Below are positions 3,320 through 52,661 of a stretch of 64,000 nt of DNA, one piece after another. Where the stretch lies: positions 62,001 through 126,000 of the IMG/VR virus record IMGVR_UViG_3300009430_000004, one strand, 5' to 3'. The position numbers and the translations under genes are program-made. The stretch's first letter is position 1, and the number at the start of each line of letters is the position of its first letter. A model generated the notes under the pieces. The model saw nothing but the letters and a program-made list of their open reading frames with translations, searched no databases and had not been told where the DNA came from.

Positions 3320-3339
3320 TTTCTTTCCCTCCCTCTATA

Positions 3340-4392: not shown

Positions 4393-4463
4393 GATCTACT
4401 CACAACCTTTCTATAATATTTTTTATAAATATGTTTGTAATTGTAATTTAAATAATCTGAAAT

Positions 4464-5462: not shown

Positions 5463-5480
5463 CTCACTTTTCTAAAAAAA

Positions 5481-6914: not shown

Positions 6915-7036
6915 CCTTTCTATTAATATGATTTATTAATATGTTTTAAAAACAAAAAAAATATTCACCCTTAACATTGCCTATTATTATAAGGGGTTAA
7001 GGGCAAATAGCGGTTTGGCTCCCGTTATTCTTCTAT

Positions 7037-7210: not shown

Positions 7211-7385
7211 AAAAACCATCCTCCCGAATTTTATTTTTAAGTCATCTCTAACTAACGCTATATTGCGGGCGGTTTTCATAAATTATTTTTCACAGTGTCT
7301 AAAAGAGATTGATGTCTTTTATCTTTCTCCTTTATACACATTGTAATAATATATATCTATTCTTTCCATTAAATTTTCAAGTGGA

Positions 7386-7397
7386 AACAAATATATA
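7386..7397 (+). promoter_or_regulatory. Late-type promoter for the baseplate operon
   Basis: AACA-AATATA-TA about 30 nt before the ATG at 7428. Confidence 0.7.
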
Positions 7398-7427
7398 ATT
7401 TAAAATAGAAAAAAAGAAGGTGATATA

Positions 7428-8909
7428 ATGCGTCTTAAAGTTAAAATAACAACAGGTGGTAGTCCACTTAGGATAAGAAGTGGTGCAAGTACATCAACTT
7501 CTGTAGTAGGTTCATTCAACAAGGGTGCTGAAACCATAGTTGTAGAATCACAATCAAGTGGTGGATGGACCTGGTATAAACTAGAAGATGGACGTGGGTG
7601 GATTTGTGGTAAAGAACCTTCTGCAAGCTATAACTATGTTACGGTACTAGAGGATTTAACACCCAAACCTGCTCCGCAACCAGCCCCAGACCCGACACCT
7701 CCAGCACCTGCACCAGATGCACCAAAACCTCAGCCACCAAAAGACCCTCCGCCTCCAGCAGTAGACCATGATAAAATAAATAGTCTAATGGAGAAGAAGG
7801 ATGTAGCTAAGGATATTGTATTTGGTAGTGAGATGAAGGATAAATTTGCTTTCGGGTTACCAGATTATGACCGTATAGATTTTACACCAAATTCGTCAGG
7901 ATTTCCTACATCGGTAGTGGATAATGGTGTAAAAATATATAATTATTTTACTGACACATCGTTCCTTAATAACAATTTAAAGGCTGTTAGGAATAATTTG
8001 AATTTGATAGGTGATGATGGGTTTAAGTCAATCAGTAGAAACCTATTTAGAAGATTTAATAGGTTTAAGGTTGCTTATCCAGATTACCACCTAGGTAAAA
8101 CATTTTCACATGTATTCTTTACAAGACCAGACTTAAATTTGGTCGACCCTTTAGGTGGAGGGAACTATCAGTTAAATTCACAGGTTTCTAATGACCCTGT
8201 GTTTTACTACTTATTTAAAAACAATCCTGAAGTAATCTTATCTTTGACAAGACATTTTTCGGCAGGACATGATTTTCATGCATTTCTGTCTAATACTGCA
8301 AGTTCATTTGAATTGTCAGATGAGTTTATCAAGACTGTTGAACATGGTGAAACCTTTACAGGGTATAAAGTACAGTATGGAAAAAATAATATTGAGTCTA
8401 GAACTGCTGGGTCATTCTCGGTCAGTTATATAGATGACCAGGATTTCTCAGTTTATAAAACTCACAAAGCTTGGATAGAATATATCTCAAGGGTGTATCG
8501 TGGCGAGATAAAAGCCGACCGTGATTATATAAAGAAAAAAATATTAGACTATGCTTGTAGTGTATACTACATAGTCTGTGGACCAGATGGAGAAACTATT
8601 TTATTCTGGTCTAAATATTATGGAGTATTTCCAACAAATGCTCCTTCGAGCACACAAAGCTGGTCAAGAGGAAACATGGTTAAAATGCCAGAATACTCTA
8701 TAAACTATGCTTACGCATTTAAAGAAGATTTCAGCCCTCTGTCTTTAGCAGAATTTAATAAAAATAGCACAGGTTATTATTTGTACAAGAAGACATATGA
8801 AAAAGAATTATTGTCAACTGGTAAAGCAATGGCTGGTGCTCCATTTATTGAGACTAGACAGGATAATTCAGGAGGGTATGACTTCAAATTGAAATTCCGA
8901 TATTTTTAA
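7428..8909 (+). CDS. Tail/baseplate structural protein with N-terminal SH3b domain and Pro-rich linker
   Basis: SH3b signature PLRIRSGASTS...WYKLEDGRGWI; PKPAPQPAPDPTPPAPAP linker; beta-rich, tail-tube-like C-terminal region; adjacent to the baseplate wedge gene. Confidence 0.65.
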   Translation: MRLKVKITTGGSPLRIRSGASTSTSVVGSFNKGAETIVVESQSSGGWTWYKLEDGRGWICGKEPSASYNYVTVLEDLTPKPAPQPAPDPTPPAPAPDAPKPQPPKDPPPPAVDHDKINSLMEKKDVAKDIVFGSEMKDKFAFGLPDYDRIDFTPNSSGFPTSVVDNGVKIYNYFTDTSFLNNNLKAVRNNLNLIGDDGFKSISRNLFRRFNRFKVAYPDYHLGKTFSHVFFTRPDLNLVDPLGGGNYQLNSQVSNDPVFYYLFKNNPEVILSLTRHFSAGHDFHAFLSNTASSFELSDEFIKTVEHGETFTGYKVQYGKNNIESRTAGSFSVSYIDDQDFSVYKTHKAWIEYISRVYRGEIKADRDYIKKKILDYACSVYYIVCGPDGETILFWSKYYGVFPTNAPSSTQSWSRGNMVKMPEYSINYAYAFKEDFSPLSLAEFNKNSTGYYLYKKTYEKELLSTGKAMAGAPFIETRQDNSGGYDFKLKFRYF

Positions 8910-8924
8910 AAAAGGGGTGATAAA

Positions 8925-11561: not shown

Positions 11562-11605
11562 AACATTATAGTAATTAACTTTAGTTATAGAAAGGAGAGA
11601 ATAGC

Positions 11606-12727
11606 ATGAGTGTATTTAAAAACATTGAGACCCGTGTTGAGAAATTCTCTACAGGAATAAAAGATCTCAATAACTATAATAAGATAAGTAACGGTGCGGC
11701 GTCGAAAGAATATCTTAACAAGAAAGCTGTTTTAGAACATTGTGAGGATATCGACGATAAGGCTAAAAAGTCTGAGAAAGATTACAACTATAGACAGAAG
11801 AATCAGGGAATATTCAATAAGCAATTACTTGAATCCCAGCTTCTATTAAAGGTTAATGAGTTAACCACACAAGGTAAGGTAACAGTATTCAAGGAGATTC
11901 TCTTTGAAGTATTTAAGAAGGCTCTTTATCTGGATGAGAGCTTTATTATGGAAAACTATGAAAATGTTAGAGCATTAACAGATTCATATGTTGATAATAA
12001 TAAAGGTATCAAACTACTTGAGTCTGCTACTCAAAGAACAAATTCTCCTCTTTTACGAAATATGCTTACTCTTTGTGAAAACACTGCAAGAAAAGTTGCT
12101 ACAAGAAAGATGCAACAAATCAATGAGTGTAGGAATCCTGAGCAATTGGATGATATCAACTTCGAGATGAACGAAGAAGAAAAAGAAACATTCAATTACG
12201 AAAAGGATAAATTGGGTATTGATGAGCTTGCTAAATTGGTAAAAGATAAGGTATTGACTGTTGTTCAGGACGAAAAGAGTCGTGAAGCTAAGCAGGAAGA
12301 ACTTTATTCTGATATCGAAGGTGAGTTAAAGGAAAACCCTGATGTTACTACTGAGGAAGCTGCTAAAGAAGCTTTAGCGAAAATAGCTATTAAGCAAAAT
12401 CCTATTGAAGAGACAACTTTGTTCAATGCATTACTTAGACATTCATATAAGGAATTGCTTGAAAATGTAGCTATCGCATCTGATGATGGTAATAAAGAGC
12501 AAAAAAGAAAAGAAGAAAATGAAGACCTTGATGACATTGATTATGACATCGAGGATGAAGTTGGTGATGACGATGTTCTAGGTTCAGATGACTTAGATAT
12601 CGACATGGACTTGGTATTAGCTGAAGCTATAACTAAGTACACGCTTATGGAAATGGCATATACTATCAGACTTGAAGAATATTCTATCGAGGCTGTTAGA
12701 AAAGTAACACAATCACTTTTAAAATAA
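11606..12727 (+). CDS. Hypothetical acidic virion protein
   Basis: 373 aa; late-type promoter at 11562-11573; repeated LLES/AVLE/LLEN motifs. Confidence 0.5.
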   Translation: MSVFKNIETRVEKFSTGIKDLNNYNKISNGAASKEYLNKKAVLEHCEDIDDKAKKSEKDYNYRQKNQGIFNKQLLESQLLLKVNELTTQGKVTVFKEILFEVFKKALYLDESFIMENYENVRALTDSYVDNNKGIKLLESATQRTNSPLLRNMLTLCENTARKVATRKMQQINECRNPEQLDDINFEMNEEEKETFNYEKDKLGIDELAKLVKDKVLTVVQDEKSREAKQEELYSDIEGELKENPDVTTEEAAKEALAKIAIKQNPIEETTLFNALLRHSYKELLENVAIASDDGNKEQKRKEENEDLDDIDYDIEDEVGDDDVLGSDDLDIDMDLVLAEAITKYTLMEMAYTIRLEEYSIEAVRKVTQSLLK

Positions 12728-12772
12728 AAAAGTAGAGTAGGAATGGTTTATCACCATTCCTACTCTATTTTT
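12728..12772. terminator. Bidirectional intrinsic terminator between convergent genes
   Basis: agagtaggaatggt-ttatc-accattcctactct with A and T tails. Confidence 0.8.
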
Positions 12773-13110
12773 CTTTTGAGGCGAACTATAAGTTCGTTAT
12801 TATTTTTTATAAATTTAAATAAAAAATTAACATCTATATCAGGACCTATCAGTTCTGATAGTTCATTGGAGATGTCGGCTTTGACATCCTCCATAATCTT
12901 CTTCTTGTCAACTTTAATAGTTAACTCATTTGTTGATATTTTATTTATTGTATATTTATCTTTAATAGATTCATTAAGCTTAGTAATTAACTGTTCGCAG
13001 TTAATTTTGTCTTTTTTCTTTTTTAACTTTTTAAATTGAGATTGGATGTAACTTGTTACACATTCATTTTCGAATAGATTAACAACTGCTGCCATCATTC
13101 TCACCTCCAA
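12760..13110 (-). CDS. Hypothetical protein
   Basis: 116 aa; SD GGAGGTG points to a start at the internal MM; ends in a bidirectional terminator. Confidence 0.5.
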   Translation of the reverse strand: MEVRMMAAVVNLFENECVTSYIQSQFKKLKKKKDKINCEQLITKLNESIKDKYTINKISTNELTIKVDKKKIMEDVKADISNELSELIGPDIDVNFLFKFIKNNNELIVRLKRKIE

Positions 13111-13151
13111 TTTCCTTTCTATTAGATATTTGTATATATGCTTGTAAGAAA

Positions 13152-13814
13152 TTACACAATTGAGTCTTTTTCTGTAATTTTATCCAGATTTTCCTGGTAG
13201 TATTTCCATCCCTCAACTTTTTTCTTATTATACTTACAATCAAATTTTTCCATGTATTCTAAATGTATTTCTATTCTTGGTTTAAAAGAATAGAATTTTC
13301 TAACTGCCCCATCCACTATTAGACAATCATCCAATAGAAGATGCTTCTGAATCATATCAGAATATGTCTTTCCAGCATTGTCCCAATCAGGTTTGGGTAT
13401 AGCAACTAATAGTTTAAGCTCAGCTAATATTTTTTCTATCTTACTCATCTGTGCTGGCATCGGCATATATAAATCGCAATAGAATTTACATGGTGTTACT
13501 ATTAAATCATACTCATCATCTGAGTTTTCTATAAAATCTTTAAATATTTGACTGTTGTCACTAGCATTCTTTACATAGAATACTTTCGTTCTACCTGAAT
13601 ATCTTGCACGAGGGGTTGCTTTCGGCAAGAAATAAAATATAAAATCAAGTTCAACCCATCGTGCTCTTTTTAATCTCAGGATAGCTTCTTTAATCTTTTC
13701 AACCTCTTTTACTTTAAGCTTCAACTCCTGAACGATATATACAAATCTATCGTATATATTATTAGGAATTTCACCATATTTCTCTTTATATTCTCGTATC
13801 TCTTTTTTGCTCAT
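13152..13814 (-). CDS. rusA: RusA-like Holliday junction resolvase
   Basis: PKATPRAR plus KPDWDNAGKTYSDMIQ...LDDCLIVD, the RusA acidic catalytic motif. Confidence 0.75.
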   Translation of the reverse strand: MSKKEIREYKEKYGEIPNNIYDRFVYIVQELKLKVKEVEKIKEAILRLKRARWVELDFIFYFLPKATPRARYSGRTKVFYVKNASDNSQIFKDFIENSDDEYDLIVTPCKFYCDLYMPMPAQMSKIEKILAELKLLVAIPKPDWDNAGKTYSDMIQKHLLLDDCLIVDGAVRKFYSFKPRIEIHLEYMEKFDCKYNKKKVEGWKYYQENLDKITEKDSIV

Positions 13815-13825
13815 ATCATCAATCC

Positions 13826-15538
13826 TTAAATCTTAAATATTGGTTCTACTTTACCTCTGATGTCCTGTATAAACTGCCTGAAATAGTTTCCAGGTAAATC
13901 TACCATTTGACCGAAGAACACGGCAAACATCGTTTCTAGTTTAAGCATAAAGTTAGGTTTTGTTATGTCAACTCCGCATGTAACTGCAAGAAAATCTATT
14001 AACCCTTGATTCTGGAAGAATAGGTCTGGTTTTGTACTGGATGTCATCATAAGGTTACTGTATAAGTCTTTTACACCAACTGTTATTTTAACCTCAGATG
14101 GTAAACCATCAGCAGTCCAGGAACCATCTCCCCCCTTATCAATATTAATAGAGTCAATTATTCCAAGTTCACATGAGAACCATCCTTTTGAGAATACCTT
14201 TACTAAAAACGGTGAGGCATAACTGTTAGCAGTAGATTGTCTAGGTAATGATAGTGCTAATATATGCATCATTGGTACAAGTATATTCAAATATATACTT
14301 TCTTTATCTCCATATGGAGATACTAGATTAATAGTTACATTGTACGACTTATTATATGCTGAATCACCCCATAATTCTGGGAATATAATATTTGATCCAG
14401 ATAATACAGTAGAGGACATACCCAGAAGCCTTGTAAAGAAGTTCTCTTTTGAGTTTTTAAGCATTTTCTGTGCTATGTCATCCATACCTTTCGCAAAGCT
14501 TTCTCTCATATCATCCAACCCTTTGACCGCAGCAGTGTTAGTTAGGAAGGCAACTTCCTTAATAATTCCTTCTGCACTATCAAACATACCTTCAAGTTTT
14601 GAAGTAGTTGTATTATTATTGGTTGATTCTGAAAACGATGTATTAGGTTCAACGAAAAATTGTGTGTATTGGTATTGACCAAACATCGCTTCATATAAAT
14701 CTGCTGTCATTTCTTTGGGACTGAATACTGAGCTATTCTTTTCATTCTTTTGTTTATAGTCATTTTTATACTTATAATCACCCCAGTCATAATATTTATA
14801 TGCTGTTGTGCCATTAGGTCCAGTTTCGTCAGCTAATCCAATATATATTGCACACATTCTACATAGAATATTTACATATTTAATGAACTCTGCATAGTCT
14901 GGAATAAAATCAAAGTATCTAATATCCTTATTGCCAAGAATCTTATCCAACACTGATTTCGTATCAGAATCGTTCGACTTACTGGTAAAGAATGATGTCA
15001 TTGCTTTTTGCTCCGAATCTGATAAATCTGGTAAATAATTCGGTCTACCAGGTATAAAATAAACTATCGGAGATTCAGCCACTATCGACTCAAGATATTT
15101 ACGTCCTAAATCCATCTCTTCATTTAATCTAAAATCAGTTTGTTTTGTAAATTGAAATGGAGAGCCAAATAGTCTTGTTGAAGCATCTATTCTTTTGTCA
15201 TAACCTTTCTTAGATTGGTCATATAACATCTGAATTACTTTGGAATCAAGTCCTAAACTTGTTCCTGTTGAAGCATCTTCGGGCATAGCAGGGGCGGGAG
15301 TTGGAGCTGGTGCTGGAGGCTTTTGCTCTTCCAGATTCTTTAACACCTTCGTGTAATTCTTAAATATCCATCCTCTACCGTCCTCTAATTTATACCAATC
15401 ACCCGAGACACCATTTACCGTTACAACAGATCCCTTAGGAAGGGCCCCATTAGTTCCATTACTTGTACTCGGTCCTTTTCTTATATTTAACGGGTCACTT
15501 TGTGTAGCAACTTGTACTTCTAATCTCATATTTATCAC
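13826..15538 (-). CDS. Tail/baseplate structural protein with N-terminal SH3b domain
   Basis: PLNIRKGPSTS...WYKLEDGRGWI; PPAPAPTPAPA linker; C-terminal tail-tube/hub-like region (PELWGDS...GIIDSINIDKG...PSEVKITVGVKDL); directly downstream of the tape-measure-like gene. Confidence 0.65.
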   Translation of the reverse strand: MINMRLEVQVATQSDPLNIRKGPSTSNGTNGALPKGSVVTVNGVSGDWYKLEDGRGWIFKNYTKVLKNLEEQKPPAPAPTPAPAMPEDASTGTSLGLDSKVIQMLYDQSKKGYDKRIDASTRLFGSPFQFTKQTDFRLNEEMDLGRKYLESIVAESPIVYFIPGRPNYLPDLSDSEQKAMTSFFTSKSNDSDTKSVLDKILGNKDIRYFDFIPDYAEFIKYVNILCRMCAIYIGLADETGPNGTTAYKYYDWGDYKYKNDYKQKNEKNSSVFSPKEMTADLYEAMFGQYQYTQFFVEPNTSFSESTNNNTTTSKLEGMFDSAEGIIKEVAFLTNTAAVKGLDDMRESFAKGMDDIAQKMLKNSKENFFTRLLGMSSTVLSGSNIIFPELWGDSAYNKSYNVTINLVSPYGDKESIYLNILVPMMHILALSLPRQSTANSYASPFLVKVFSKGWFSCELGIIDSINIDKGGDGSWTADGLPSEVKITVGVKDLYSNLMMTSSTKPDLFFQNQGLIDFLAVTCGVDITKPNFMLKLETMFAVFFGQMVDLPGNYFRQFIQDIRGKVEPIFKI

Positions 15539-15604
15539 CTTCCTTAAAAAAATAATAGAGATAAGACACTACATCTTATCTCTATGTTTTATTTATATTA
15601 TTTG

Positions 15605-27553: not shown

Positions 27554-27565
27554 TAAGATATTGTT
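27554..27565 (-). promoter_or_regulatory. Late-type promoter for the tape-measure operon
   Basis: AACA-ATATCT-TA about 28 nt before the ATG at 27526. Confidence 0.7.
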
Positions 27566-28205: not shown

Positions 28206-28278
28206 GATACATACCTCCTAATTTTAATTAGATTTTTAGTGGTTTATTTTATTAATTAGTTTAGGGTGTAATAATTTA

Positions 28279-34704: not shown

Positions 34705-34763
34705 TTTCGATCACCCTTTCTCATAATAGTCTAGTATTATAAGAATGTTAGTGATCGAAAACG
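34702..34763 (-). promoter_or_regulatory. RBS/start-codon-sequestering hairpin containing a late-type promoter, upstream of RNAP beta
   Basis: mRNA cguuuucgaucac...gugaucgaaaaUG and uucuuauaaua/uauuaugagaa arms; AACA-TTCTTA-TA at 34749-34738 lies in the 5' arm. Confidence 0.75.
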
Positions 34764-40009: not shown

Positions 40010-40339
40010 ATGAAAGATCTAGGATTCACTATAGAACGTAAACCTGGGGTTAGGGAAGGTTTGGTAGTAATAAAACCTGGTGAGAAGACAGGTGATGATA
40101 TTAAAAGTATTCATGAACTTATGCAAATAAAGGATAAACTTAATCCAACGGAATTCTATAATTGTCTTATGGCTCTAAATGCTGGAGCTGAGTTTATCCA
40201 TTTTGAATATAATGACGAGAAGGATTGTATTGAGATAAGTCATGCTTATTATTTTACTGACGAATTTGAATATGAAACTTGGAGGAAAACTTACTCAATA
40301 AGTTATCCTATAGAGATTATAAAGTTGAAAAAAGAATGA
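40010..40339 (+). CDS. Hypothetical protein
   Basis: 109 aa; SD GAGGAGG. Confidence 0.55.
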   Translation: MKDLGFTIERKPGVREGLVVIKPGEKTGDDIKSIHELMQIKDKLNPTEFYNCLMALNAGAEFIHFEYNDEKDCIEISHAYYFTDEFEYETWRKTYSISYPIEIIKLKKE

Positions 40340-40396
40340 GGTGTACGTGAGTACACCTATTTTTTTATATTTGGACAAACTTTTATTTAAATAATT

Positions 40397-41131
40397 ATGA
40401 ATGGGATGGGTAATATGAATACCGCAGGAAAGCTAATAGTTATAGAGGGACCAGATGGTTCTGGAAAGAAAACACATGCAAAGAAACTATCGGAGAGGTT
40501 AGATAAAGAGGGAATGAGTAATATGCAGGTAGCATTCCCAAACTATGGGTCACCTCAATGTGCAATGGTTGAGAAATATTTAGACCCAAATGGTGGATTT
40601 AAAAATCTCTATGGTGAAGATAATCTGACATATATAAAACAAGCATCATTATTTTATGCAATTGATAGAGTTGCAACGTTTATTGATACAAAAAACGAGA
40701 CTGGTGAATCGTTACTTGAAATGTTGAGACAAGGTATGCATATAGTATGCGATAGATATACCACATCCAACATACTTCATCAGGTTGGAAATTTATCACA
40801 CACTGAGCATATGATTCCATATATTGACTGGGTTCAGGACACAGAATATTATCATCTCGGCTTACCAAAGCCAGACCTAGTAATATTCCTTGATGTTGTA
40901 CCTGAGATTTCCATGGAGAATATGAGGCGTCGTTACCATGGTAAAGATGGTGTTGACAAACATGAGAACATGGCTCACTTATCTAAAGTATTTGAGAGAA
41001 AAGATAGAGTTATTAAATACTGTGGATGGGAAAAGATAAATTGCTGTGACGACAAGGGAAAGATGCTTCCACAAGAAGTAATACACAAATCCATTTTCAA
41101 GAAGGTTAGGAAAGTACTAAATCAAAAATAA
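40397..41131 (+). CDS. tmk: Thymidylate kinase
   Basis: LIVIEGPDGSGKKT P-loop; LFYAIDR; CDRYTTS; LPKPDLVIFLDV. Confidence 0.9.
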   Translation: MNGMGNMNTAGKLIVIEGPDGSGKKTHAKKLSERLDKEGMSNMQVAFPNYGSPQCAMVEKYLDPNGGFKNLYGEDNLTYIKQASLFYAIDRVATFIDTKNETGESLLEMLRQGMHIVCDRYTTSNILHQVGNLSHTEHMIPYIDWVQDTEYYHLGLPKPDLVIFLDVVPEISMENMRRRYHGKDGVDKHENMAHLSKVFERKDRVIKYCGWEKINCCDDKGKMLPQEVIHKSIFKKVRKVLNQK

Positions 41132-41217
41132 GTTTAACCCTATTGGTAAACTCTAAGCCAACAATTATATATTATTAATAAGTGTATATAAAATAAAAAC
41201 CTTAGGGGGTAGACAAA

Positions 41218-41550
41218 ATGATTTATAGTATTAATCATGACAAAGTAGGTTTATATGCAATTAATTTGGATTGGGTGTTTGCTCATGGGACTCTAGAAGA
41301 ATTCCTAGAATATGATTGTGTTAAAACCGATTCATTAATGGTATTCCATCATTATCTTAAAGTGGATAAAGGAGAATTACCATATGCTATTATAGAAGAT
41401 AGTGCCGAAAATCAATTCGGTGAGATAGTTAGAGTTAAAATATTCTTATGGAAAACCCAAATTATGAGAGGGTTTATTGTTAATATAAGAGATGAAGAAG
41501 CTATTAAACATGCACAAGAAAAATTCGACGAAAGGTCGACCATGTTGTAA
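41218..41550 (+). CDS. Hypothetical early protein
   Basis: 110 aa; early-type promoter at 41166-41175; terminator near 41578-41625. Confidence 0.6.
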   Translation: MIYSINHDKVGLYAINLDWVFAHGTLEEFLEYDCVKTDSLMVFHHYLKVDKGELPYAIIEDSAENQFGEIVRVKIFLWKTQIMRGFIVNIRDEEAIKHAQEKFDERSTML

Positions 41551-41734
41551 TAAATTATAGATTTCTCAGCCTCTCAAAATAGTGTCTACATATACGGAAA
41601 TCCGTGTTGTAGACATTATTTTTTTGTCTAAAATTGACTTTTAAAAGTTGGAACAATACAATGAATCCAAAATAGGGTGATAAAATTGTCACCCTATTAT
41701 TTTTTTATTCGATGACCAACTTTTAAATAAATCA

Positions 41735-44146
41735 ATGGAAAGAAATGTAAAATCTAGGAGGATGGGAAGTATGAAACCACAAATTATTTCTGACAATGCA
41801 CAGAGAATTTTAACAGAGAAAAATTACTTTAGAAATGGTGAAACCCACTGGGGAGATATCACCGACAGAGTATCAAAAGGAATCTCATTAGGAGAGCCTA
41901 AGGTAGAAGACAGGGAGAACGTTGCTCATGAAATAAATGAAGCATTAAAATCCCTTGAGTTTATATTTAGTAGTCCATGCCTTCTCAACGCAAGTGTTGT
42001 GAATCCTGGACAATTATCATCATGTTTCGTGGTAGGGTTGAGAGACAACATAGAAGCTATCAGTAAATGTGATGCAAACTTTGCAAAGATATTCCAACGT
42101 AATGGAGGAGCTGGAACAGACTTATCTGTTTTAAGACCTAACAAATCAAGAGTTGAGAATACTAATGGTTATTCATGTGGTGTTGTAGGATTTATGTATA
42201 AATTCAATGCAACAGCAGATATAATGACAAGAAATAATCCTACTAAAAGAGGAGCATTAAAGCTAAATCTTTCAGTATGGCATCCAGATATAATTGACTT
42301 CATCCACTCAAAATCAAAGGATGGGGAACTATCATTGATGAATATATCAGTTTCATTATTCGATGAGTTCATGATGGCTTGTTTAAATGATGAAGACTGG
42401 AATCTTGAATTCCCTGATTATTCATTTAATAAGGAAGTATATAACAATGAATGGGATGGAGACCTTGCTTTATGGAAAGAAAAGGGTTACCCTGTAGTTG
42501 TTTATCAGACTATAAAAGCAAGAGAATTGCTTGACATACTTTGTTTACAAGCATGGAAGACTGGTGAACCTGGAGTTAACTTCCAAGATGTAATGAATAG
42601 GGCTAATATGAATCCACATCTTGGTAGACAGATATTCACAAATCCATGTAACGAATTTGCTAATCTTATTTACACAAGCTGTAACTTAGCAAGCTTGAAC
42701 TTATTAAGACTTGTTATTGCTGGTAAATTTGATAGACAAAAGTTTATTAAGATGGTTAAGAATGGAATTAGATGGCTTGATGATATGATATCAGTTAACA
42801 AGCTCCCTCTACCTGAAATTCAAGAAATGACTGAGAAAATCAGACCTGTTGGATTAGGTGTTATGGGATTTGCTGATGTTTTATATGCTCTAAGAATTCC
42901 ATATAACTCAGTACAGGGTATACAATTTGCAGATGATTTGTTCTCTTTAATGAGACAGGCGGCTATTGAAGCTTCATCTGAATTAGCAGAGGAAAGAGGA
43001 TGTTATCCTGGATGGGAAGGAAGCAAGTGGCAACAGATGGGTATTCCAATGAGGAATAGTAATCTCTTATCAATTGCTCCAACAGGAACAATCTCAACAA
43101 TTGCTGATGTAAGTGGTTCTATTGAGCCAAACTTTGCATTAGTATTCTACAGAAAGACAAACTCAGGACAAAAATACTTATTCGTAAACGAGACATTCAA
43201 AGCTGAACTCGTTGAAAGAGGTATATATAGTGAAGAATTACTTGAGAAGATATTCAAGAATCACGGAAGCTGCGTGGGTATATCAGAGGTTCCAGAGGAT
43301 ATGCAGAGAATATATGTTACCGCACATGATATCACACCAATGGATCATTTGGATATGGTTGCTGTAATACAAAAACATATCGACCTTGCTATCAGTAAAA
43401 CAATTAACTTTGAAAACTCTGTTCCAGTTGAGGATATTAAGGGAGTTATTACTGAAGCTTGGAAAAAAGGTGTTAAGGGTATGACTGTATACAGAGATGG
43501 GTGTAGATCTGACCAGACTTTAACAACAGGTTCTACTTATGATAAGAAAGAAGAACCAAAGAAGATTAAGACAAGAAGAGAAATGGGTAGAAGACTTCCA
43601 GGTGCAACTTATGATGCTGAATCAGCATGTGGAAAGTTCTATTTAACTGTAAATAGAGATGCTGAAGGTAACTTTGTTGAAACCTTCGTTAATTTCAAGA
43701 AAGGACTTTGTAAATCAAATATAGATGGACTTAACAGGATGATTTCATTGGCTTTAAGGAATGGAATTCCAGCCGAAGCAGTAATTGAACAATTGAAAGG
43801 AATTTCATGTTCAGCTTGCACTAGAGTTGCTTCTAATGGAGATAAGCAAATTGATGGAATTAGCTGTCCAGATATAATTGCTAAGGTTCTTGAGCAAGAA
43901 TTTAAAATGGCTGCAACAAATCAAACACCAGTATCGGTGAATAAGGTTGAATTTCCAGCCGTTTGGACAACAGGTAAAGATGTTGCTGGAACAGGAATAG
44001 ATGCTAATTTAGTTAAATCTCATAAAACTCCACAAGAAGTAGCAGAATGTATTGCTAATAACATCTGCCCAGAATGTGGTACTGAGTTAACTCACGGAGC
44101 ATGTGTAGAATGTCCAGATTGTGGCTGGAATAAGTGTGGAGCTTAA
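41735..44146 (+). CDS. nrdJ: Class II (adenosylcobalamin-dependent) ribonucleotide reductase with TSCPD-like and C-terminal Zn-ribbon regions
   Basis: QLSSCFV, TGEPG, TNPCNE, SCNLASLNL, RPVGLG, IAPTGTIS, ISKTIN, KGMTVYRDG, SCPD, terminal CPECG...CPDCG. Likely start 41771; no NrdB gene nearby. Confidence 0.9.
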   Translation: MERNVKSRRMGSMKPQIISDNAQRILTEKNYFRNGETHWGDITDRVSKGISLGEPKVEDRENVAHEINEALKSLEFIFSSPCLLNASVVNPGQLSSCFVVGLRDNIEAISKCDANFAKIFQRNGGAGTDLSVLRPNKSRVENTNGYSCGVVGFMYKFNATADIMTRNNPTKRGALKLNLSVWHPDIIDFIHSKSKDGELSLMNISVSLFDEFMMACLNDEDWNLEFPDYSFNKEVYNNEWDGDLALWKEKGYPVVVYQTIKARELLDILCLQAWKTGEPGVNFQDVMNRANMNPHLGRQIFTNPCNEFANLIYTSCNLASLNLLRLVIAGKFDRQKFIKMVKNGIRWLDDMISVNKLPLPEIQEMTEKIRPVGLGVMGFADVLYALRIPYNSVQGIQFADDLFSLMRQAAIEASSELAEERGCYPGWEGSKWQQMGIPMRNSNLLSIAPTGTISTIADVSGSIEPNFALVFYRKTNSGQKYLFVNETFKAELVERGIYSEELLEKIFKNHGSCVGISEVPEDMQRIYVTAHDITPMDHLDMVAVIQKHIDLAISKTINFENSVPVEDIKGVITEAWKKGVKGMTVYRDGCRSDQTLTTGSTYDKKEEPKKIKTRREMGRRLPGATYDAESACGKFYLTVNRDAEGNFVETFVNFKKGLCKSNIDGLNRMISLALRNGIPAEAVIEQLKGISCSACTRVASNGDKQIDGISCPDIIAKVLEQEFKMAATNQTPVSVNKVEFPAVWTTGKDVAGTGIDANLVKSHKTPQEVAECIANNICPECGTELTHGACVECPDCGWNKCGA

Positions 44147-44218
44147 TAAAAAACATTATTGGAGATAGTTAGATTTTATCTAACTATCTCCTTAACTTAT
44201 ATTTAGGGGGTGTTTTAA

Positions 44219-44890
44219 ATGTTACCCGAAACAATTTTTCATAAATCTCCTTGGATAGAAGGGGAATATCAATACTTTGAAGATAATGACGGAACTAAAT
44301 GGAAAAGAAAATTTGATATGAGTGGTAGTAGTAACCATGGAAAATGGGAAAAAATAAGTGGAGGGGGAGAAAGGATGGAAAGAGTTGATAAAATTAACTA
44401 CTATTTAGACCAGGCTGAAGTTATTGCTGAAAGAAGCACATGTCTTAGAAGACAATATGGTGCTATAATAGTAAAGAATGACGAACCTATCGCATCAGGA
44501 TATAATGGAGCACCAAGAGGTGTCGTAAACTGTTGTGATGTTGAGTTCTGTATGAGAGAAATAAAGAATATTCCAGCAGGCGAACGATATGAAATGTGTC
44601 GTTCGGTACATGCTGAGATGAATGCAATGTTATCTGCTAAAAGGTCAGATATGATAGGTTCAACAATGTATCTAGTTGGACTCGATGTTGCTACAGGAAG
44701 TTATTCTAAATATAACAAACCCTGTAAAATATGCTCCAGAATGATAATTAATTCTGGCATAGAAGAAGTCGTAATGAGAATAGATAAACAAAACTATGAA
44801 ACCATAGTAACAGCTTCTCTTCAGAGTGAAATGGATGAAGAGATGATGATAATGGAATATGAAGCTAAGAAAATAAAGGAGGGAAAGTAA
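44219..44890 (+). CDS. dCMP deaminase
   Basis: RSTCLRRQYGA, GYNGAPRG, VHAEMNA and PCKIC Zn-deaminase motifs; the deaminase domain starts at the internal MERVDK after GGAGGGGG. Confidence 0.9.
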   Translation: MLPETIFHKSPWIEGEYQYFEDNDGTKWKRKFDMSGSSNHGKWEKISGGGERMERVDKINYYLDQAEVIAERSTCLRRQYGAIIVKNDEPIASGYNGAPRGVVNCCDVEFCMREIKNIPAGERYEMCRSVHAEMNAMLSAKRSDMIGSTMYLVGLDVATGSYSKYNKPCKICSRMIINSGIEEVVMRIDKQNYETIVTASLQSEMDEEMMIMEYEAKKIKEGK

Positions 44891-44894
44891 AAAA

Positions 44895-45822
44895 ATGGGA
44901 TTAATTAAATTAATAACTCATGGAGATATGGACGGTATCTCATGTTATTTGATGGTTAAACTTATACCTAACCATAAGAATGTAGATGTTACATTTGAGG
45001 ATTACAACACAGTCAATAATACAATAATTATATTTGTTAACAGCGGAGAATATAAAAATTATTCTCATGTCTATGTAACTGACCTAGGAATTAGTGAAGA
45101 GGCTGCTGCTAAATTAGATTCTATTAAGGATGAGTGTATGGTTACATTCATAGACCACCATGATACTAATAAGTGGATAGCTGAAAAATATTCATGGGCT
45201 ACTGTTATTTCTACAGTAGACGGAAGAAAGATTTCTGCAACAAAACTAATATTTGATAAATATAATCAATATATGCCAATCAATTGCATAGGTCAAATAA
45301 GCCTTTTCGCAAGTCTCGTTAGCGATTATGACACCTACACATGGAAAGATGAGAATAAACAAGATCCTAAACTTCTACAGGATTTATTCTCAATTTACGG
45401 TAGGAATATTTTCCTTGAGAAGATGGAGCAAAGACTAGCTACAAACCAACCTATAATAACAGAAGACGATAAGTTCCTTTCTTATGATTGAAAGACATCG
45501 TATTGATAGATATATCAAGTATAAGATGAAGGAAGTTATCTATAGAGAACTTAATGGATTTAAAGTCGGTATAGTATTTGCTGACCAATATGTGAGTGAA
45601 TTGGGAAATACTCTATGTGAAAAACTAGATATTGATATTGCGGCAATAGTTGATTTCAACTCAAAATGTATCAACTATAGATGTATTCGAGATGATATAC
45701 ATTTAGGGAAAGAATTCGCTTCACTATATGGTGGAGGGGGACACCCTAAGGCGGCAGGCAGTCAACTTACTAAGGAACTTATTAGTAGTGTAGCAGATAT
45801 GGTATTTACATTAGATAAATAG
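44895..45822 (+). CDS. DHH/DHHA1 phosphoesterase split into two ORFs (44895..45491 and 45484..45822) by an apparent +1 frameshift
   Basis: THGDMDG, VTDLG, IDHH and DYDT in ORF1; GGGGHPKAAG in ORF2. Removing one T near 45478-45480 gives continuous KFLLMIERHRIDRY. Confidence 0.8.
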
Positions 45823-45920
45823 TAAATTCAAAACCGATGTTTATATATTATAATAATAGATAGGGAGATAAGATATACCTATCTATTATTATAATTTTAT
45901 TCTGTGGGAGGAATTAAATC

Positions 45921-46667
45921 GTGGAAATTAAAAACAGTGTTGAAAAATTTATGGTAGTTGAAAGAAAGGTTCATGAACTTGTCATCTATATGGACAACAT
46001 GATTGAACTTGGTTCTATTAAAACATATGAAGACTTTAGGAAGACACTTAAAGAATATTATAAAAGTGAAAAATTCCTAGACACTTCTAGCCGTATGGGA
46101 GAACAAGCATCTATCTATATAGGTAATATGGTAAGCAGTTATATCATATGTAAGTGTGATGAGTTATTTGGTGCTAAGTTATGTCAGGAGAGTCTTAATG
46201 CAATTAAGAAGCTCGTTGAAAGCACCACAGTGTCATTCATTAATATTCTTAGCCCTTTAAGTATTTCGATGGTTAAATCAATACCAGAGGCTATGTTAGA
46301 ATATGCATGGATTTCCAAAATAACTGCTATGGCATGTGAAGAAAAATCTGTACAAACACGAGTTGATTTAATAACTCAGATTCATAGTCAAATAGAATCT
46401 GGACAAATTGATGTTTTAGTCATGGATCATAATCGTGTATTTGTAAAAGGTGTTGAAAATCAACAGCTTGTTGATACTTGTAGTAACTATAATCATTATA
46501 TTGATGAGATAGTGAAGCGACTAAATGAGAAAGGTGTTTATACGAATATAAACACAATGCATGATTTCTCCGAATTCCTTAATGAAGATATTGAATATAA
46601 CTATATAAGGGTTACTATATCGGGTAAAGGAAACTTGGATTTCATAGCAAAAGATTTCAATAAATAA
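45921..46667 (+). CDS. Hypothetical early protein
   Basis: 248 aa; GTG start with SD GGGAGG; early-type promoter at 45842-45851. Confidence 0.6.
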   Translation: MEIKNSVEKFMVVERKVHELVIYMDNMIELGSIKTYEDFRKTLKEYYKSEKFLDTSSRMGEQASIYIGNMVSSYIICKCDELFGAKLCQESLNAIKKLVESTTVSFINILSPLSISMVKSIPEAMLEYAWISKITAMACEEKSVQTRVDLITQIHSQIESGQIDVLVMDHNRVFVKGVENQQLVDTCSNYNHYIDEIVKRLNEKGVYTNINTMHDFSEFLNEDIEYNYIRVTISGKGNLDFIAKDFNK

Positions 46668-46764
46668 AATAAAAAAATAAGGTGATTTAGGTCATCTTAT
46701 TTTTTTTCTATTTTTGTAAAAAAATATAGACATGCTAACAAATATTTAATAAATAAAGAAGGGG

Positions 46765-47604
46765 ATGGTGGGTAAAATGAATAAAGCCGACAGAATATTT
46801 AGAGAACTTTGTACAAATATTATGGAGAATGGGGTTAGCACAGAAGGTCAAAAAGTTAGACCAAAGTATGCAGATGGAACTCCTTCACACACATTATTTC
46901 TAAATCAAGTTTCAGAGGAATATGACATCTCCAAGGGAGAATTTCCAATAATAACTGTGAGACCAATTGCTTGGAAATTTGGGATAAAGGAAATCCTCTG
47001 GATATATCAGGATCAAACAAATGATTTAACCGTACTTAAAGAGAAGTATGGTATTGACTGGTGGGATGAGTGGAATGTTGGAGACAACACTATAGGACAA
47101 AGATATGGTGCAACTATCCGTAGATATGACTTGATGAATAAGTTATTAAACGGAATTAAAAATGAACCATATGGTCGTCGCCACATCATCAATTTATATC
47201 AATACGCTGACTTTGAAGAGACAAAAGGATTATTCCCATGTGCAATGGAGACTCATTGGACAGTTAGAGGAGAATTCCTTGATATGACAATGATTCAGCG
47301 TTCATCAGATTACTTAATGGCTAACCATATAAACAAAATGCAATACGTTGCATTACTTATGATGGTTGCTAAACACTGTGGCTACAAGCCAGGAAAGTTT
47401 GTACATTTCACTCAAAATGTACACATCTATGATAGACATGTTGAGCAAGCTAAAGAATTATTAGCTAGAGAGCCAAGAGATGCAAGTCCTCAACTTATCT
47501 TAGATACAGATAAGACAAACTTCTACGAGTTTACAATTGACGATTTTAAGATGATCGACTATGACCCAATTAAGCCAAATGTAAAGCTAGAAATAGCTAT
47601 ATAA
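46765..47604 (+). CDS. thyA: Thymidylate synthase
   Basis: EILW, YG, RRH, LFPC (catalytic Cys), QRSSD...INKMQY, NVHIYDRH. Confidence 0.93.
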   Translation: MVGKMNKADRIFRELCTNIMENGVSTEGQKVRPKYADGTPSHTLFLNQVSEEYDISKGEFPIITVRPIAWKFGIKEILWIYQDQTNDLTVLKEKYGIDWWDEWNVGDNTIGQRYGATIRRYDLMNKLLNGIKNEPYGRRHIINLYQYADFEETKGLFPCAMETHWTVRGEFLDMTMIQRSSDYLMANHINKMQYVALLMMVAKHCGYKPGKFVHFTQNVHIYDRHVEQAKELLAREPRDASPQLILDTDKTNFYEFTIDDFKMIDYDPIKPNVKLEIAI

Positions 47605-47614
47605 GAGGTGTGAG

Positions 47615-48121
47615 ATGACTGTTAAGAATATCAGTATGATTGTAGATGTAGATAATGAGAATGGGATAGGATATCGAAATAAGTTACTATGTCATATCTC
47701 AGAAGATTTAAAATACTTTAAGAAGATGACACATGGGAAGGCAATAGTAATGGGTCTTAACACATTCTTATCATTACCTAAGGCACCATTACCAAATAGG
47801 ATTAATATAGTCCTTACTACAAAAACGGCAGGATTTGCAGACCCCAATATTATAGTAATGCATTCAATTGAAAGCGTTATAAAATGGGCTGAAGCTAATC
47901 CTGAGATAGAAGTAATGATATGTGGTGGTGCATCAGTATATGAACAGTTCATGGAATATGCAAGTAAGTTATATGTAACTCATATAGCCCACACCTTTCA
48001 GGCAGATACATTCTTCCCAGGCTTTGATGATTGGGAACCTGTTTGGGTGCAAGCTGATAGAGAAAACTTAAAACACCAATATCCACATATATTTACTATA
48101 TATGAGAAAATCCAGGAATAA
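47615..48121 (+). CDS. folA: Dihydrofolate reductase
   Basis: GIG.NKL, DLKYFKKMT, VMG..TF.SLP, PLPNRINIVLT, CGGASVY, ADTFFP. Confidence 0.93.
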   Translation: MTVKNISMIVDVDNENGIGYRNKLLCHISEDLKYFKKMTHGKAIVMGLNTFLSLPKAPLPNRINIVLTTKTAGFADPNIIVMHSIESVIKWAEANPEIEVMICGGASVYEQFMEYASKLYVTHIAHTFQADTFFPGFDDWEPVWVQADRENLKHQYPHIFTIYEKIQE

Positions 48122-48175
48122 AAATCTAATGGGTAAACATCTAAGTAAAATATTTTATTAGAGGGGGTTACCACT

Positions 48176-52488: not shown

Positions 52489-52661
52489 AAAAACAGTAGT
52501 TACCCTACTAGCACCACCAAGCTAGTAGGGTAACCATCTTACGTTTAAGGAGGTAACTTCATGGAAATTATGAGCAAACTTATAAATTGTATTTAGGCAA
52601 ACTATTATATAAAAGTTTGAAATTTGTTTACCTGAAAATGGTAAAATGAGGGGGTAAGGGT

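What the first reader, a model, noticed from the sequence alone, without database searches (positions are those of the whole stretch)
40397..48121. AR9-type (uracil-read) late promoter consensus in a phage carrying a full dTTP pathway
Seen: 15 intergenic AACA-N6-T[A/G] sites plus AACT-N6-TA variants (near 28250, 40378, 41718 and 52600), including one in front of thyA. The window also encodes dCMP deaminase, ThyA (Asn at the dUMP-specificity position, INKMQY), DHFR and Tmk. Known: Bacillus phage AR9 has dU-DNA and its non-virion RNAP needs template-strand uracils in this consensus. Inference: this phage probably has thymine DNA, so its RNAP would read the same promoter without uracil. That would be a natural comparator for how dU-specific recognition evolved. 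The AACT variants precede tmk, nrdJ and rnhA and could be a middle class.
Basis: partly seen in the sequence, partly recalled or inferred. Interest (0 to 1): 0.6.

Follow-up and report, generated by a model that had tools for sequence, protein, structure and literature searches.

The report
AR9-type late promoters without uracil
An uncultured 218-kb jumbo phage, distantly related to Bacillus phage AR9, has AR9's short late-promoter motif and its five-subunit phage RNA polymerase, but it and all ten sampled relatives encode thymidylate synthesis, so its polymerase probably reads thymine where AR9's enzyme strictly needs uracil.

Summary
AACA-N6-TA is a real promoter-like signal that depends on position and orientation. 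In the whole genome, 53 sites lie 15-45 nt upstream of start codons, against 9.0 +/- 3.0 in shuffles and 5 antisense. The signal is specific for N6 and for TA; TG is not enriched. Fifteen or sixteen sites lie in the window, including one before thyA.

The genome is a distant AR9 relative with all five nvRNAP subunits, including a gp226 homologue, four vRNAP subunits and AR9's early-promoter core, TATATTAT. The named genes are confirmed: Tmk, RNR, dCMP deaminase, ThyA and DHFR.

New evidence:
- All 10 sampled genomes of this uncultured clade carry ThyA or ThyX, and 9 carry Tmk. None of 6 cultured dU phages carries any of these.
- DHFR occurs only alongside ThyA.
- The HAD deoxyribonucleotidase kept by all six dU phages survives here only as a copy without its nucleophile Asp.
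- The Val of gp226 that excludes thymine, invariant in dU phages, is Gln here and variable across the clade.

The promoter is not identical to AR9's: +2A is conserved, and -11 and -8 are relaxed. The AACT and TACA variants are real and conserved at orthologous genes.

Thymine DNA is a strong inference, not a demonstration. This is a new variant of a known system.

The parts
40339..40358 (+). Intrinsic terminator-like hairpin followed by a T run, just upstream of the tmk promoter variant
40378..40390 (+). AACT-N6-TAA promoter variant before tmk
   Evidence: The G002 tmk orthologue also has AACT-N6-TA after a terminator.
40415..41131 (+). Thymidylate kinase. The open frame starts at 40397; the RBS favours 40415.
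   Evidence: Pfam PF02223, 2e-19. Present in 9 of 10 clade genomes and 0 of 6 dU phages.
41168..41175 (+). Early (vRNAP-type) promoter core TATATTAT before ORF 41218-41550. The AACA match at 41160 overlaps it and is ambiguous.
   Evidence: AR9 early consensus
41671..41698 (+). Terminator-like hairpin before the RNR promoter variant
41718..41730 (+). AACT-N6-TAA promoter variant before the RNR gene
41771..44146 (+). The open frame starts at 41735.
   Evidence: Pfam PF02867 9e-130 and PF12637 7e-20. 23% identity to AR9 NrdE.
44219..44890 (+). dCMP deaminase
   Evidence: Pfam PF00383, 1.5e-16. Homologue of AR9 g221.
44895..45822 (+). NrnB-like DHH/DHHA1 phosphoesterase, split here into two overlapping ORFs (44895-45491 and 45484-45822)
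   Evidence: It is a single ORF in G002 and G006.
45844..45851 (+). Early promoter core TATATTAT before ORF 45921-46667 (unknown function)
46737..46748 (+). Late-type AACA-N6-TA promoter before thymidylate synthase ThyA-DHFR; the predicted start is the A at 46748
   Evidence: The G002 thyA is also preceded by AACA-N6-TA.
46777..47604 (+). Thymidylate synthase ThyA. The open frame starts at 46765.
   Evidence: Pfam 5.5e-72. Best solved relative is B. subtilis ThyA 1B02/1BKO at 2e-50. Catalytic Cys, the RSSD...N motif and a C-terminal ...EIAI are present.
47615..48121 (+). Dihydrofolate reductase
   Evidence: Pfam 2.9e-47. In the clade it occurs only in the three ThyA genomes.
48136..48147 (+). 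Late-type AACA-N6-TA promoter before ORF 48176-48745
52600..52612 (+). AACT-N6-TAA variant before RNase H (52662-53294)
28249..28261 (-). AACT-N6-TAA variant before ORF 27654-28205
   Evidence: AACT is kept at the orthologous position in G002 and G006.
27554..27565 (-). Late AACA-N6-TA promoter before the 3973-aa tape-measure-like gene (15605-27526)
34738..34749 (-). Late AACA-N6-TA promoter before the virion-RNAP beta-like gene (30229-34704)
2173..15588 (.). Six further late AACA-N6-TA sites, each 27-47 nt before a structural-region gene: 2173(-), 4424(-), 6934(-), 7386(+), 11562(+), 15577(-)

Best explanation
The window belongs to a complete, uncultured 218-kb jumbo phage that is a distant relative of Bacillus phage AR9.

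Transcription plan, by homology with AR9:
- A virion RNAP reads early promoters with the core TATATTAT.
- A five-subunit non-virion RNAP (split beta, split beta-prime, and a gp226-type sigma-like subunit) reads late promoters. Their consensus is AACA-N6-TAA, and transcription probably starts at the first A of TAA, about 28-30 nt before the start codon.
- AACT and TACA versions are weaker or specialised members of the same promoter family.

The base. Unlike AR9, this phage makes dTTP through RNR, dCMP deaminase, ThyA with DHFR, and Tmk. It lacks an active copy of the deoxyribonucleotidase that all six dU phages keep. Its DNA therefore most likely carries thymine, and the polymerase must accept 3'-TTGT-5' on the template strand, where AR9's enzyme accepts only 3'-UUGU-5'.

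The recognition helix. The helix of the sigma-like subunit that contacts these bases (the 2.1bis helix) is rebuilt. AR9's D204-x-V206-I-W-x-Y210 becomes N-K-Q-I-W-T-Q here.

Shown: the motif statistics, the homologies, the gene content across the clade and the residue differences. Inferred: that the motif is the nvRNAP promoter, the start site, thymine in the DNA, and how the pocket accommodates the methyl group.
For: Relationship to AR9:
- 66 of 231 predicted proteins have AR9 homologues (22-42% identity). These include all five nvRNAP subunits and four vRNAP subunits.
- A profile of the clade's gp226 homologues hits the AR9 gp226 chain 7S01_A over its full length, E=1.3e-40.
- An AF2 model (pLDDT 87) finds 7S01_A, 7UM0_A and phiKZ gp68 as its top folds.

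Motif:
- 53 sites against 9.0 +/- 3.0 in shuffles and 5 antisense.
- The same pipeline recovers AR9's known promoter: 60 sites against 9.9.
- The motif is also top-ranked or strongly enriched in relatives G002 (54 sites) and G006 (44 sites).

Gene class:
- 15 of 23 homologues of AR9 structural, virion or packaging genes have AACA only directly upstream.
- 9 of 21 replication, nvRNAP and nucleotide-metabolism homologues have TATATTAT.
- The gp226 homologue has an early promoter in three genomes, as in AR9.

Thymine:
- ThyA or ThyX in 10 of 10 clade genomes and 0 of 6 dU phages.
- Tmk in 9 of 10 against 0 of 6.
- DHFR only in the three ThyA genomes. This fits a true DHF-producing thymidylate synthase.
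- The HAD deoxyribonucleotidase has motif I intact (DCDEVL) in all six dU phages. The weak homologues here and in G002 and G007 lack the nucleophile Asp and read TYDEVI.
- Iyer et al. 2021 (PMC7824862) name the absence of TS/Thy1 and of dUTPase as the determinants of dU genomes.

Pocket:
- Fraser et al. 2022 (PMC9209446) report that V206 clashes with the C5 methyl at -10, that V206G accepts T, and that Val is invariant in dU phages.
- Here that position is Gln. Across 116 clade sequences it varies: V 28, L 18, R 16, T 15, G 11, P 9. D204 becomes N in 107 of 116 and Y210 becomes Q in 111 of 116.
- The beta-N pocket residues R363 and K375 are conserved.
- On the gp226 tree the dU phages and this clade fall on opposite sides of one branch, SH-aLRT 99.
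Against: - There is no direct chemistry of the virion DNA and no transcript 5' ends.
- G000 has no dUTPase, so one of the two negative determinants of dU DNA is met.
- 28 of 116 clade homologues, including ThyX-carrying G006, still have Val at the 206 position. That residue alone does not explain the specificity.
- In AR9, exclusion of T at -11 comes from the DNA backbone rather than from a side chain. How T would fit at -11 here is unknown.
- My gene calls are heuristic, so counts could shift by a few sites.
- Ugi absence is uninformative. It is detectable only in AR9 and BpSp.
Confidence: 0.78

Rival explanations
1. The phage still packages dU-DNA like AR9. The thymidylate genes would serve another purpose or act only at some stage, and the polymerase would be uracil-dependent as in AR9.
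For: G000 has no dUTPase. It has a dCMP deaminase like AR9. A distant homologue of the dU-phage HAD nucleotidase is present. Some clade members keep Val at the 206 position.
Against: TS is present in 10 of 10 clade genomes and 0 of 6 dU phages. Tmk is present in 9 of 10 against 0 of 6. DHFR occurs only with ThyA. The HAD homologue lacks its nucleophile Asp and its Lys motif. The 2.1bis helix signature that is invariant in dU phages is not kept. Two clade members do carry dUTPase.
Confidence: 0.07
2. The DNA carries a thymine-derived or 5-substituted uracil base, such as 5-hmdU or a hypermodified T, and not plain thymine. The ThyA homologue would act as a dUMP hydroxymethylase, or the base would be modified after replication.
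For: ThyA-family enzymes include hydroxymethylases, as noted in PMC7824862. Many ORFs in the window have no Pfam match and could hide modification enzymes.
Against: DHFR co-occurs strictly with ThyA, as expected only if DHF is produced. Seven relatives use ThyX instead, which is known only as a thymidylate synthase. ThyA is closest to B. subtilis ThyA and keeps the closing C-terminus. It is 55-58% identical to the thymidylate synthases of Bacillus siphophages.
Confidence: 0.07
3. The motif is read mainly on the non-template strand (5'-AACA-3', which contains no T or U). On this reading the U/T question does not arise for this clade, and the template-strand pocket has lost its role.
For: The AR9 gp226 NTD also binds the complementary AACA strand. 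The groove residues involved (S245, Y246) are largely kept in the clade: S in 83 of 116, F or Y in 95 of 116. The residues that contact template -9G (Y210, F261) are replaced.
Against: The beta-N residues R363 and K375, which hold the -10 template base, are conserved. So are I207 and W208 in this phage. Positions -10 and -9 remain invariant in all genomes, as expected if the same pocket is used.
Confidence: 0.12
4. AACA-N6-TA is not a promoter of the phage RNAP. It could instead be a host-sigma promoter element, an RNA-processing site or a leader element.
For: There are no TSS data for this phage. The motif is short.
Against: It is the same motif, at the same distance and before the same gene classes, as the experimentally mapped AR9 late promoters. 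Sigma-70-like sites are not enriched: 74 against 80.6 expected. The full nvRNAP is encoded. The motif is conserved at orthologous genes although the flanks have diverged.
Confidence: 0.03

Closest known systems
Late promoters of Bacillus phage AR9/PBS1 read by the nvRNAP holoenzyme (gp105, gp089, gp270, gp154, gp226)
   Same: The core is AACA-N6-TA. The position before structural and virion genes is the same. All five polymerase subunits are homologous. The early promoter core TATATTAT is shared, and genes carrying both promoter types occur in both.
   Different: AR9 has dU-DNA and no ThyA, ThyX, Tmk or DHFR. AR9's motif is strict at -11 and -8 and has no +2A preference: 21 of 60, against 50 of 53 here. 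The gp226 helix D-x-V-I-W-x-Y becomes N-K-Q-I-W-T-Q.
Engineered AR9 gp226 V206G mutant (Fraser et al. 2022, PMC9209446)
   Same: Both are gp226-type subunits in which the residue that blocks the thymine methyl at -10 is no longer Val.
   Different: This is a natural variant. The residue is Gln rather than Gly, the position varies across the clade and is sometimes still Val, and neighbouring contact residues (D204, Y210, F261) also differ. V206G relaxed only the -10 pocket.
Other dU jumbo phages with gp226 homologues: vB_BpuM-BpSp, Listeria LPJP1, Staphylococcus S6/SA1 group, Yersinia phiR1-37
   Same: The gp226 family is shared, and so is the AR9-like gene repertoire.
   Different: All six lack TS and Tmk, keep the invariant D-x-V-I-W-x-[YF] helix and keep an intact HAD deoxyribonucleotidase. 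On the gp226 tree they fall on the other side of a branch with 99% support.
phiKZ nvRNAP with gp68 and TATG late promoters (thymine DNA, phage nucleus)
   Same: It is a multisubunit phage RNAP with a structurally related fifth subunit working on thymine DNA. 8QUE_B is the third-best fold match.
   Different: The promoter is different (TATG at the start site, no -10-like AACA). The fifth subunit is far more distant (10% identity).

Membership tests
AR9-type nvRNAP late promoter | Consensus 5'-AACA-N6-TA-3' with a fixed 6-nt spacer | tested here: met
   53 sites against 9.0 +/- 3.0 in shuffles. N6 gives 53 against 5 at N5 and 6 at N7. TA gives 53 against 3 for TG.
AR9-type nvRNAP late promoter | Transcription starts at the A of TA (motif at -11 to +1) | not testable with these tools
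The motif ends at a mode of 26-30 nt before start codons, which fits a short leader holding the RBS.
AR9-type nvRNAP late promoter | Precedes late (virion, structural, vRNAP) genes, while nvRNAP and replication genes have early promoters | tested here: met
   15 of 23 structural homologues have AACA only. 9 of 21 replication/nvRNAP homologues have TATATTAT.
AR9-type nvRNAP late promoter | Cognate five-subunit nvRNAP, including the gp226 specificity subunit, is encoded | tested here: met
   Homologues of AR9 g089, g105, g154, g270 and g226. Hit to PDB 7S01_A at E=1.3e-40.
AR9-type nvRNAP late promoter | Recognition requires uracil at template positions -11 and -10 | not testable with these tools
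   This is a biochemical property. The genomic proxies point the other way: TS and Tmk are present and Val206 is not conserved.
gp226/gp68 sigma-like subunit of jumbo-phage nvRNAPs | Full-length sequence and fold similarity to AR9 gp226 | tested here: met
   hmmsearch E=1.3e-40 over residues 15-461 of 7S01_A. Foldseek E=2.5e-18, probability 1.00.
gp226 subfamily of dU phages | Invariant 2.1bis helix D204-x-V206-I207-W208-x-[Y/F]210 | tested here: not met
   This phage has N-K-Q-I-W-T-Q. In the clade, N204 occurs in 107 of 116, position 206 is variable, and Q210 occurs in 111 of 116.
dU-DNA jumbo phages (PBS1/AR9 type) | No thymidylate synthase (ThyA or ThyX) | tested here: not met
   ThyA at window 46777-47604. 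10 of 10 clade genomes have ThyA or ThyX, against 0 of 6 dU phages.
dU-DNA jumbo phages (PBS1/AR9 type) | No dUTPase | tested here: met
   No PF00692 match in G000. Relatives G004 and G005 do have one.
dU-DNA jumbo phages (PBS1/AR9 type) | Intact HAD 5'(3')-deoxyribonucleotidase (candidate dTMPase; AR9 g151 orthologue) | tested here: not met
   Orthologues with DCDEVL occur in 6 of 6 dU phages. G000 has only a 28%-identical homologue reading TYDEVI, without the nucleophile Asp.
Thymidylate synthase ThyA (EC 2.1.1.45) | Pfam PF00303 over cut-off, catalytic Cys, dUMP-binding Arg/Asn, closing C-terminus, partner DHFR | tested here: met
   242 bits. The alignment to B. subtilis ThyA shows PC, RSSD...N and a C-terminal EIAI. 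DHFR lies 10 nt downstream. Enzyme activity was not tested.

The most novel reading that the evidence does not exclude
A large uncultured clade of AR9-like jumbo phages uses thymine DNA but keeps AR9's template-strand -10-like promoter. More than 270 gp226 homologues were found, and names attached to two of them point to Clostridia hosts. The sigma-like subunit would have evolved a differently built pocket that accepts the 5-methyl group. Position -11 is progressively relaxed, down to NACA in the G007 lineage, and a new +2A contact appears. If so, the clade is a natural evolutionary series between thymine-reading and uracil-only promoter recognition. The conserved AACT variants before tmk, RNR, RNase H and uvsX may mark a separate temporal class that AR9 lacks.
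Probability: 0.45. Interest if true: 0.75.

Novelty: new variant of a known kind. Interest (0 to 1): 0.62.

Why it matters
AR9's non-virion RNA polymerase is the only known multisubunit RNAP that reads a -10-like element on the template strand and requires deoxyuridine there. So far the only thymine-tolerant comparator is an engineered V206G mutant that relaxes one pocket.

This phage and its clade offer a natural comparator:
- the same polymerase architecture and the same core motif;
- gene content that argues for thymine DNA in every sampled member;
- a rebuilt recognition helix.

That makes a specific question testable with recombinant proteins: which changes convert uracil-only recognition into thymine-tolerant recognition, and in which direction did evolution go?

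It also bears on the proposal that uracil dependence is what keeps AR9's polymerase off host DNA. A thymine-DNA relative with an equally short motif and no known nucleus genes would need another solution.

The reviews I read (PMC7598289, PMC13282480) describe RNAP-encoding jumbo phages as either thymine-DNA nucleus formers or AR9-like uracil-DNA phages. I found no paper describing a thymidylate-synthesising AR9-like clade.

Tried and rejected
- Megablast of 40397-48121 against cultured phages found no match. The genome has no close cultured relative.
- tblastn of the gp226 homologue against the phage collection gave only one weak hit, BpSp at 6e-5. The relationship needed a local search against AR9 and a profile.
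- The search for related loci with the single protein found only the phage itself. An alignment was needed.
- The TG start-site alternative is rejected: 11 of 143 sites intergenic, and 3 sites in the upstream window.
- Sigma-70-type promoters are not enriched: 74 against 80.6.
- An Ugi search is uninformative. Ugi is detectable only in AR9 and BpSp, not in the other dU phages.
- UDG was found in none of the 16 genomes, so it does not discriminate.
- Pfam on 25 further ORFs gave only RNase H plus a few matches below the curated cut-offs (23 window ORFs; two genome ORFs outside the window). I therefore found no DNA-modification enzyme, but I cannot exclude one.
No expression or read-level evidence was obtained, read laying was not used, and I did not try to get it another way.
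- The careful maximum-likelihood tree did not finish in the time limit. The quick IQ-TREE result is used. phiR1-37 sits on a very long branch.
- One Pfam call failed on a wrong frame and was repeated without that entry.
- The simple idea that Val206 is replaced by a small residue, as in V206G, is rejected as the general explanation. The position is Gln here and is still Val in ThyX-carrying G006.
Full report
WHAT THE WINDOW IS

The window is bases 62001-126000 of a single 218,088-bp contig. The contig has 33.5% GC, and its ends overlap by 31 bp. IMG/VR classes it as having direct terminal repeats and being 100% complete. It has no close cultured relative.

A local tblastn of my 231 heuristic gene calls against Bacillus phage AR9 (KU878088, fetched) found homologues for 66 of them at 22-42% identity, in syntenic blocks. 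They include:
- all five subunits of AR9's non-virion RNA polymerase (g089, g105, g154, g270 and the specificity subunit gp226);
- four virion-RNAP subunits, one of which lies in the window at 30229-34704 on the minus strand;
- capsid, portal, sheath, protease and tape-measure proteins, and the replication proteins.

THE OBSERVATION

Counted over the whole window on both strands, the loose pattern AACA-N6-T[A/G] is not enriched: 93 matches against 111 expected. The signal is positional.

- Genome-wide, 71 of 214 AACA-N6-TA sites are intergenic, although only 8.4% of the sequence is. AACA-N6-TG shows no enrichment.
- Most intergenic sites point towards the next gene and end at a mode of 26-30 nt before its start codon.
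- In the window 15-45 nt upstream of starts there are 53 sites. Dinucleotide-preserving shuffles give 9.0 +/- 3.0 (maximum 19), and the opposite orientation gives 5.
- AACA is the top-ranked of all 256 four-base words in this test. The spacer is specific (53 at N6, 5 at N5, 6 at N7), and so is the second element (TA 53, TG 3).
- As a positive control, the same script run on AR9 recovers AR9's experimentally defined late promoter: 60 sites against 9.9 +/- 3.2.

Two sites (34971, 36311) are far from any gene start. One (41160) overlaps an early-promoter motif. The site at 46737-46748 lies 28 nt before the likely thyA start.

The gene identifications are confirmed by Pfam. ThyA aligns best to B. 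subtilis ThyA. It has the catalytic Cys, the RSSD...N dUMP-binding motif and a closing C-terminus.

THE TRANSCRIPTION PLAN MATCHES AR9'S

A second intergenic motif, TATATTAT, is enriched: 62 intergenic against 37 coding occurrences. It is the core of AR9's annotated early promoter, AAATATATATTAT.

Comparing promoter type with gene class:
- Of 23 homologues of AR9 structural, virion or packaging genes, 15 have only AACA-N6-TA directly upstream, and two more have TACA.
- Of 21 replication, nvRNAP and nucleotide-metabolism homologues, nine have TATATTAT. Four of those nine also have AACA, like AR9's continuously expressed genes.

The gp226 homologue itself has an early promoter in three clade genomes, as gp226 does in AR9. 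Sigma-70-like sites are not enriched, whereas intrinsic terminators are: 19 against 4.5 expected.

THE SIGMA-LIKE SUBUNIT

The gp226 homologue lies outside the window, at genome 37427-38911.
- It has more than 270 metagenomic relatives, many on contigs of 200-260 kb. The only organism names attached are Herbinix sp. and Romboutsia ilealis.
- A profile of 27 of them matches the solved AR9 gp226 chain (7S01_A, 7UM0, 7UM1) over its full length, E=1.3e-40.
- An AlphaFold model (pLDDT 87) finds the same chains first and phiKZ gp68 third.

Fraser et al. 2022 (PMC9209446) report the following for AR9:
- The template -10 uracil is buried between gp226 I207 and beta-N R363.
- Its C5 atom lies 3.9 A from the C-beta of V206.
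- The V206G mutant accepts thymine at -10.
- Val is invariant in dU phages.
- Y210 stacks on -9G.
- Thymine at -11 is excluded by the DNA backbone.

My alignment agrees with this for the six cultured dU phages (AR9, BpSp, LPJP1, S6, SA1, phiR1-37). All six have D-x-V-I-W-x-[Y/F].

The uncultured clade differs. This phage has N-K-Q-I-W-T-Q. Across 116 clade sequences:
- D204 is Asn in 107.
- Y210 is Gln in 111.
- The Val position is variable: V 28, L 18, R 16, T 15, G 11, P 9.
- W208 is kept.

MAFFT and HMMER give the same mapping. Beta-N R363 and K375 are conserved in this phage. On a quick ML tree of the family, the dU phages and the clade lie on opposite sides of one branch, SH-aLRT 99.

THYMINE OR URACIL

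I searched ten clade genomes (G000-G009, seven of them at least 90% complete) and the six dU phages for the key genes.

| Gene | Clade genomes (10) | dU phages (6) |
|---|---|---|
| Thymidylate synthase (ThyA or ThyX) | 10 | 0 |
| Tmk | 9 | 0 |
| DHFR | 3 | 0 |
| dUTPase | 2 | 0 |

- ThyA is in G000, G002 and G004. ThyX is in the other seven.
- The one clade genome without Tmk is 79% complete.
- DHFR is found in exactly the three ThyA genomes. This is what the chemistry predicts, because only ThyA produces dihydrofolate. It argues that these ThyA proteins are true thymidylate synthases and not hydroxymethylases.
- dUTPase is in G004 and G005 only, not in G000.

Conversely, AR9's HAD-type 5'(3')-deoxyribonucleotidase (g151, a candidate for the dTMP phosphatase known from PBS2) has clear orthologues in all six dU phages. 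In G000, G002 and G007 there are only weak homologues. In the alignment, the dU-phage proteins all carry the HAD motif I, DCDEVL. The clade proteins have TYDEVI or TYDGIL there, so they lack the nucleophile Asp. They also lack the conserved Lys motif.

Ugi and UDG searches do not discriminate.

Iyer et al. 2021 state that the absence of TS/Thy1 and of dUTPase are the negative determinants of uracil genomes. The first is clearly not met here.

I therefore put thymine DNA at about 0.85. It remains an inference from gene content.

THE PROMOTER IS SIMILAR BUT NOT IDENTICAL

Counts at N6, with the mean of the N5 and N7 controls in brackets:

| Genome | AACA | Variants above control |
|---|---|---|
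| AR9 | 60 (5) | none |
| G000 | 53 (5.5) | TACA 13 (5), AACT 14 (5.5) |
| G002 | 54 (4.5) | AACT 13 (3.5) |
| G006 (ThyX) | 44 (12) | CACA 11 (4), AACG 7 (1) |
| G007 (ThyX, 44% GC) | 8 | -11 degenerate: A/C/G/T-ACA 8, 9, 13, 10 against controls of 0-3 |

- Positions -10 and -9 are invariant in every genome.
- +2A is conserved in the clade (50 of 53, 38 of 54 and 38 of 44) but not in AR9 (21 of 60).
- The position that AR9 excludes as thymine through its DNA conformation (-11) is therefore the one that has loosened in the thymidylate-synthesising clade.

THE AACT SITES

With the +2A included, AACT-N6-TAA is spacer-specific: 12 at N6 against 2 and 3 at N5 and N7.

- In the window, the sites before tmk and the RNR gene each follow a terminator directly, with no other promoter motif in between.
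- AACT is kept at orthologous positions despite diverged flanks. This holds for tmk (G000, G002), the ORF at 27654-28205 (G000, G002, G006), g152 (G000, G002; AACA in G006) and g165.
- uvsX has AACT, AACA or TACA, depending on the genome.

They are therefore functional members of the same promoter family. They lean towards nucleotide and replication genes (tmk, RNR, RNase H, uvsX) but also precede genes in structural regions. Whether they form a middle class cannot be decided without timing data.

MECHANISM

Shown: the statistics, the homologies and the residue and gene-content contrasts.

Inferred:
- The nvRNAP holoenzyme with the gp226 homologue initiates at the A of TAA.
- The template strand reads 3'-TTGT-5'.
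- The rebuilt 2.1bis helix, perhaps with more reliance on the non-template AACA groove (whose residues S245 and Y/F246 are kept), lets the enzyme accept the 5-methyl groups.

The simple Val-to-small-residue explanation fails. This phage has Gln, and ThyX-carrying G006 still has Val.

NOVELTY

The promoter type, the polymerase and the uracil rule are known (PMC5312081, PMC5449584, PMC9209446, PMC7598289). What I did not find in the library is an AR9-like lineage that makes thymidylate and keeps the AACA promoter. I rate it a new variant of a known kind.

LIMITS

- There is no DNA chemistry and there are no transcript ends.
- Gene calls are heuristic.
- The tree is a quick search, and phiR1-37 sits on a very long branch.
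- Only ten clade genomes were scored for gene content.

Noticed in passing
window 44895-45491 and 45484-45822 (+): The NrnB-like DHH/DHHA1 phosphoesterase is split into two overlapping ORFs here. It is a single ORF of 338 or 319 aa in relatives G002 and G006, and a single ORF in AR9 (g157). This could be a frameshift, a split gene or an assembly error.
   Followed up: partly
G000:C1:33588-34295 (+), outside the window (L007:13588-14295): A degenerate homologue of the HAD 5'(3')-deoxyribonucleotidase that all six dU phages keep. Motif I reads TYDEVI where the dU phages read DCDEVL, so the nucleophile Asp is lost. It may be a relic of, or a precursor to, the dTMP-removing enzyme.
   Followed up: partly
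window 15605-27526 (-): A 3973-aa ORF whose first 500 or so residues resemble AR9's tape measure protein g204. It has its own late AACA promoter at 27554.
   Followed up: no
window 1-4392 (-): Four tandem genes of 350-394 aa. The fourth (3340-4392) is a distant paralogue of each of the other three (21-35% identity); no other pair matched. Two of the four have their own AACA-N6-TA promoter (2173, 4424).
   Followed up: partly
window 28559, 28641, 29200, 35017, 35447, 41168, 45844, 48806, 49327, 54128, 54163: The early-promoter core TATATTAT is shared with AR9's annotated early promoters. It is usually followed 4-6 nt later by G-T/A, as in AR9. The vRNAP promoter therefore seems conserved between the dU and thymidylate-synthesising lineages.
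   Followed up: partly
relatives G001, G003, G005, G006, G008, G009 (e.g. G006:C1:210558-211679): ThyX appears as one open frame of 445-491 aa with two Thy1 matches (a tandem-domain ThyX). In four genomes it lies 2-3 kb from tmk.
   Followed up: no
L023 and L028 (IMGVR_UViG_3300025000_000053, 249,853 bp): One contig carries two different copies of the gp226 homologue (both 62-63% identical to the query). It may be a chimeric or concatenated assembly of two related phages.
   Followed up: no
window 41771-44146 (+): The RNR is a single large-subunit type with a TSCPD domain and no beta subunit nearby. AR9 has class Ib NrdEF plus NrdI. This fits an anaerobic host, as do the Herbinix and Romboutsia names on related contigs.
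   Followed up: no
G000:C1:182305-182332: Two AACA-N6-TA sites on opposite strands overlap in a near-palindrome and face divergent genes g184 and g185. This is an apparent bidirectional late promoter.
   Followed up: no
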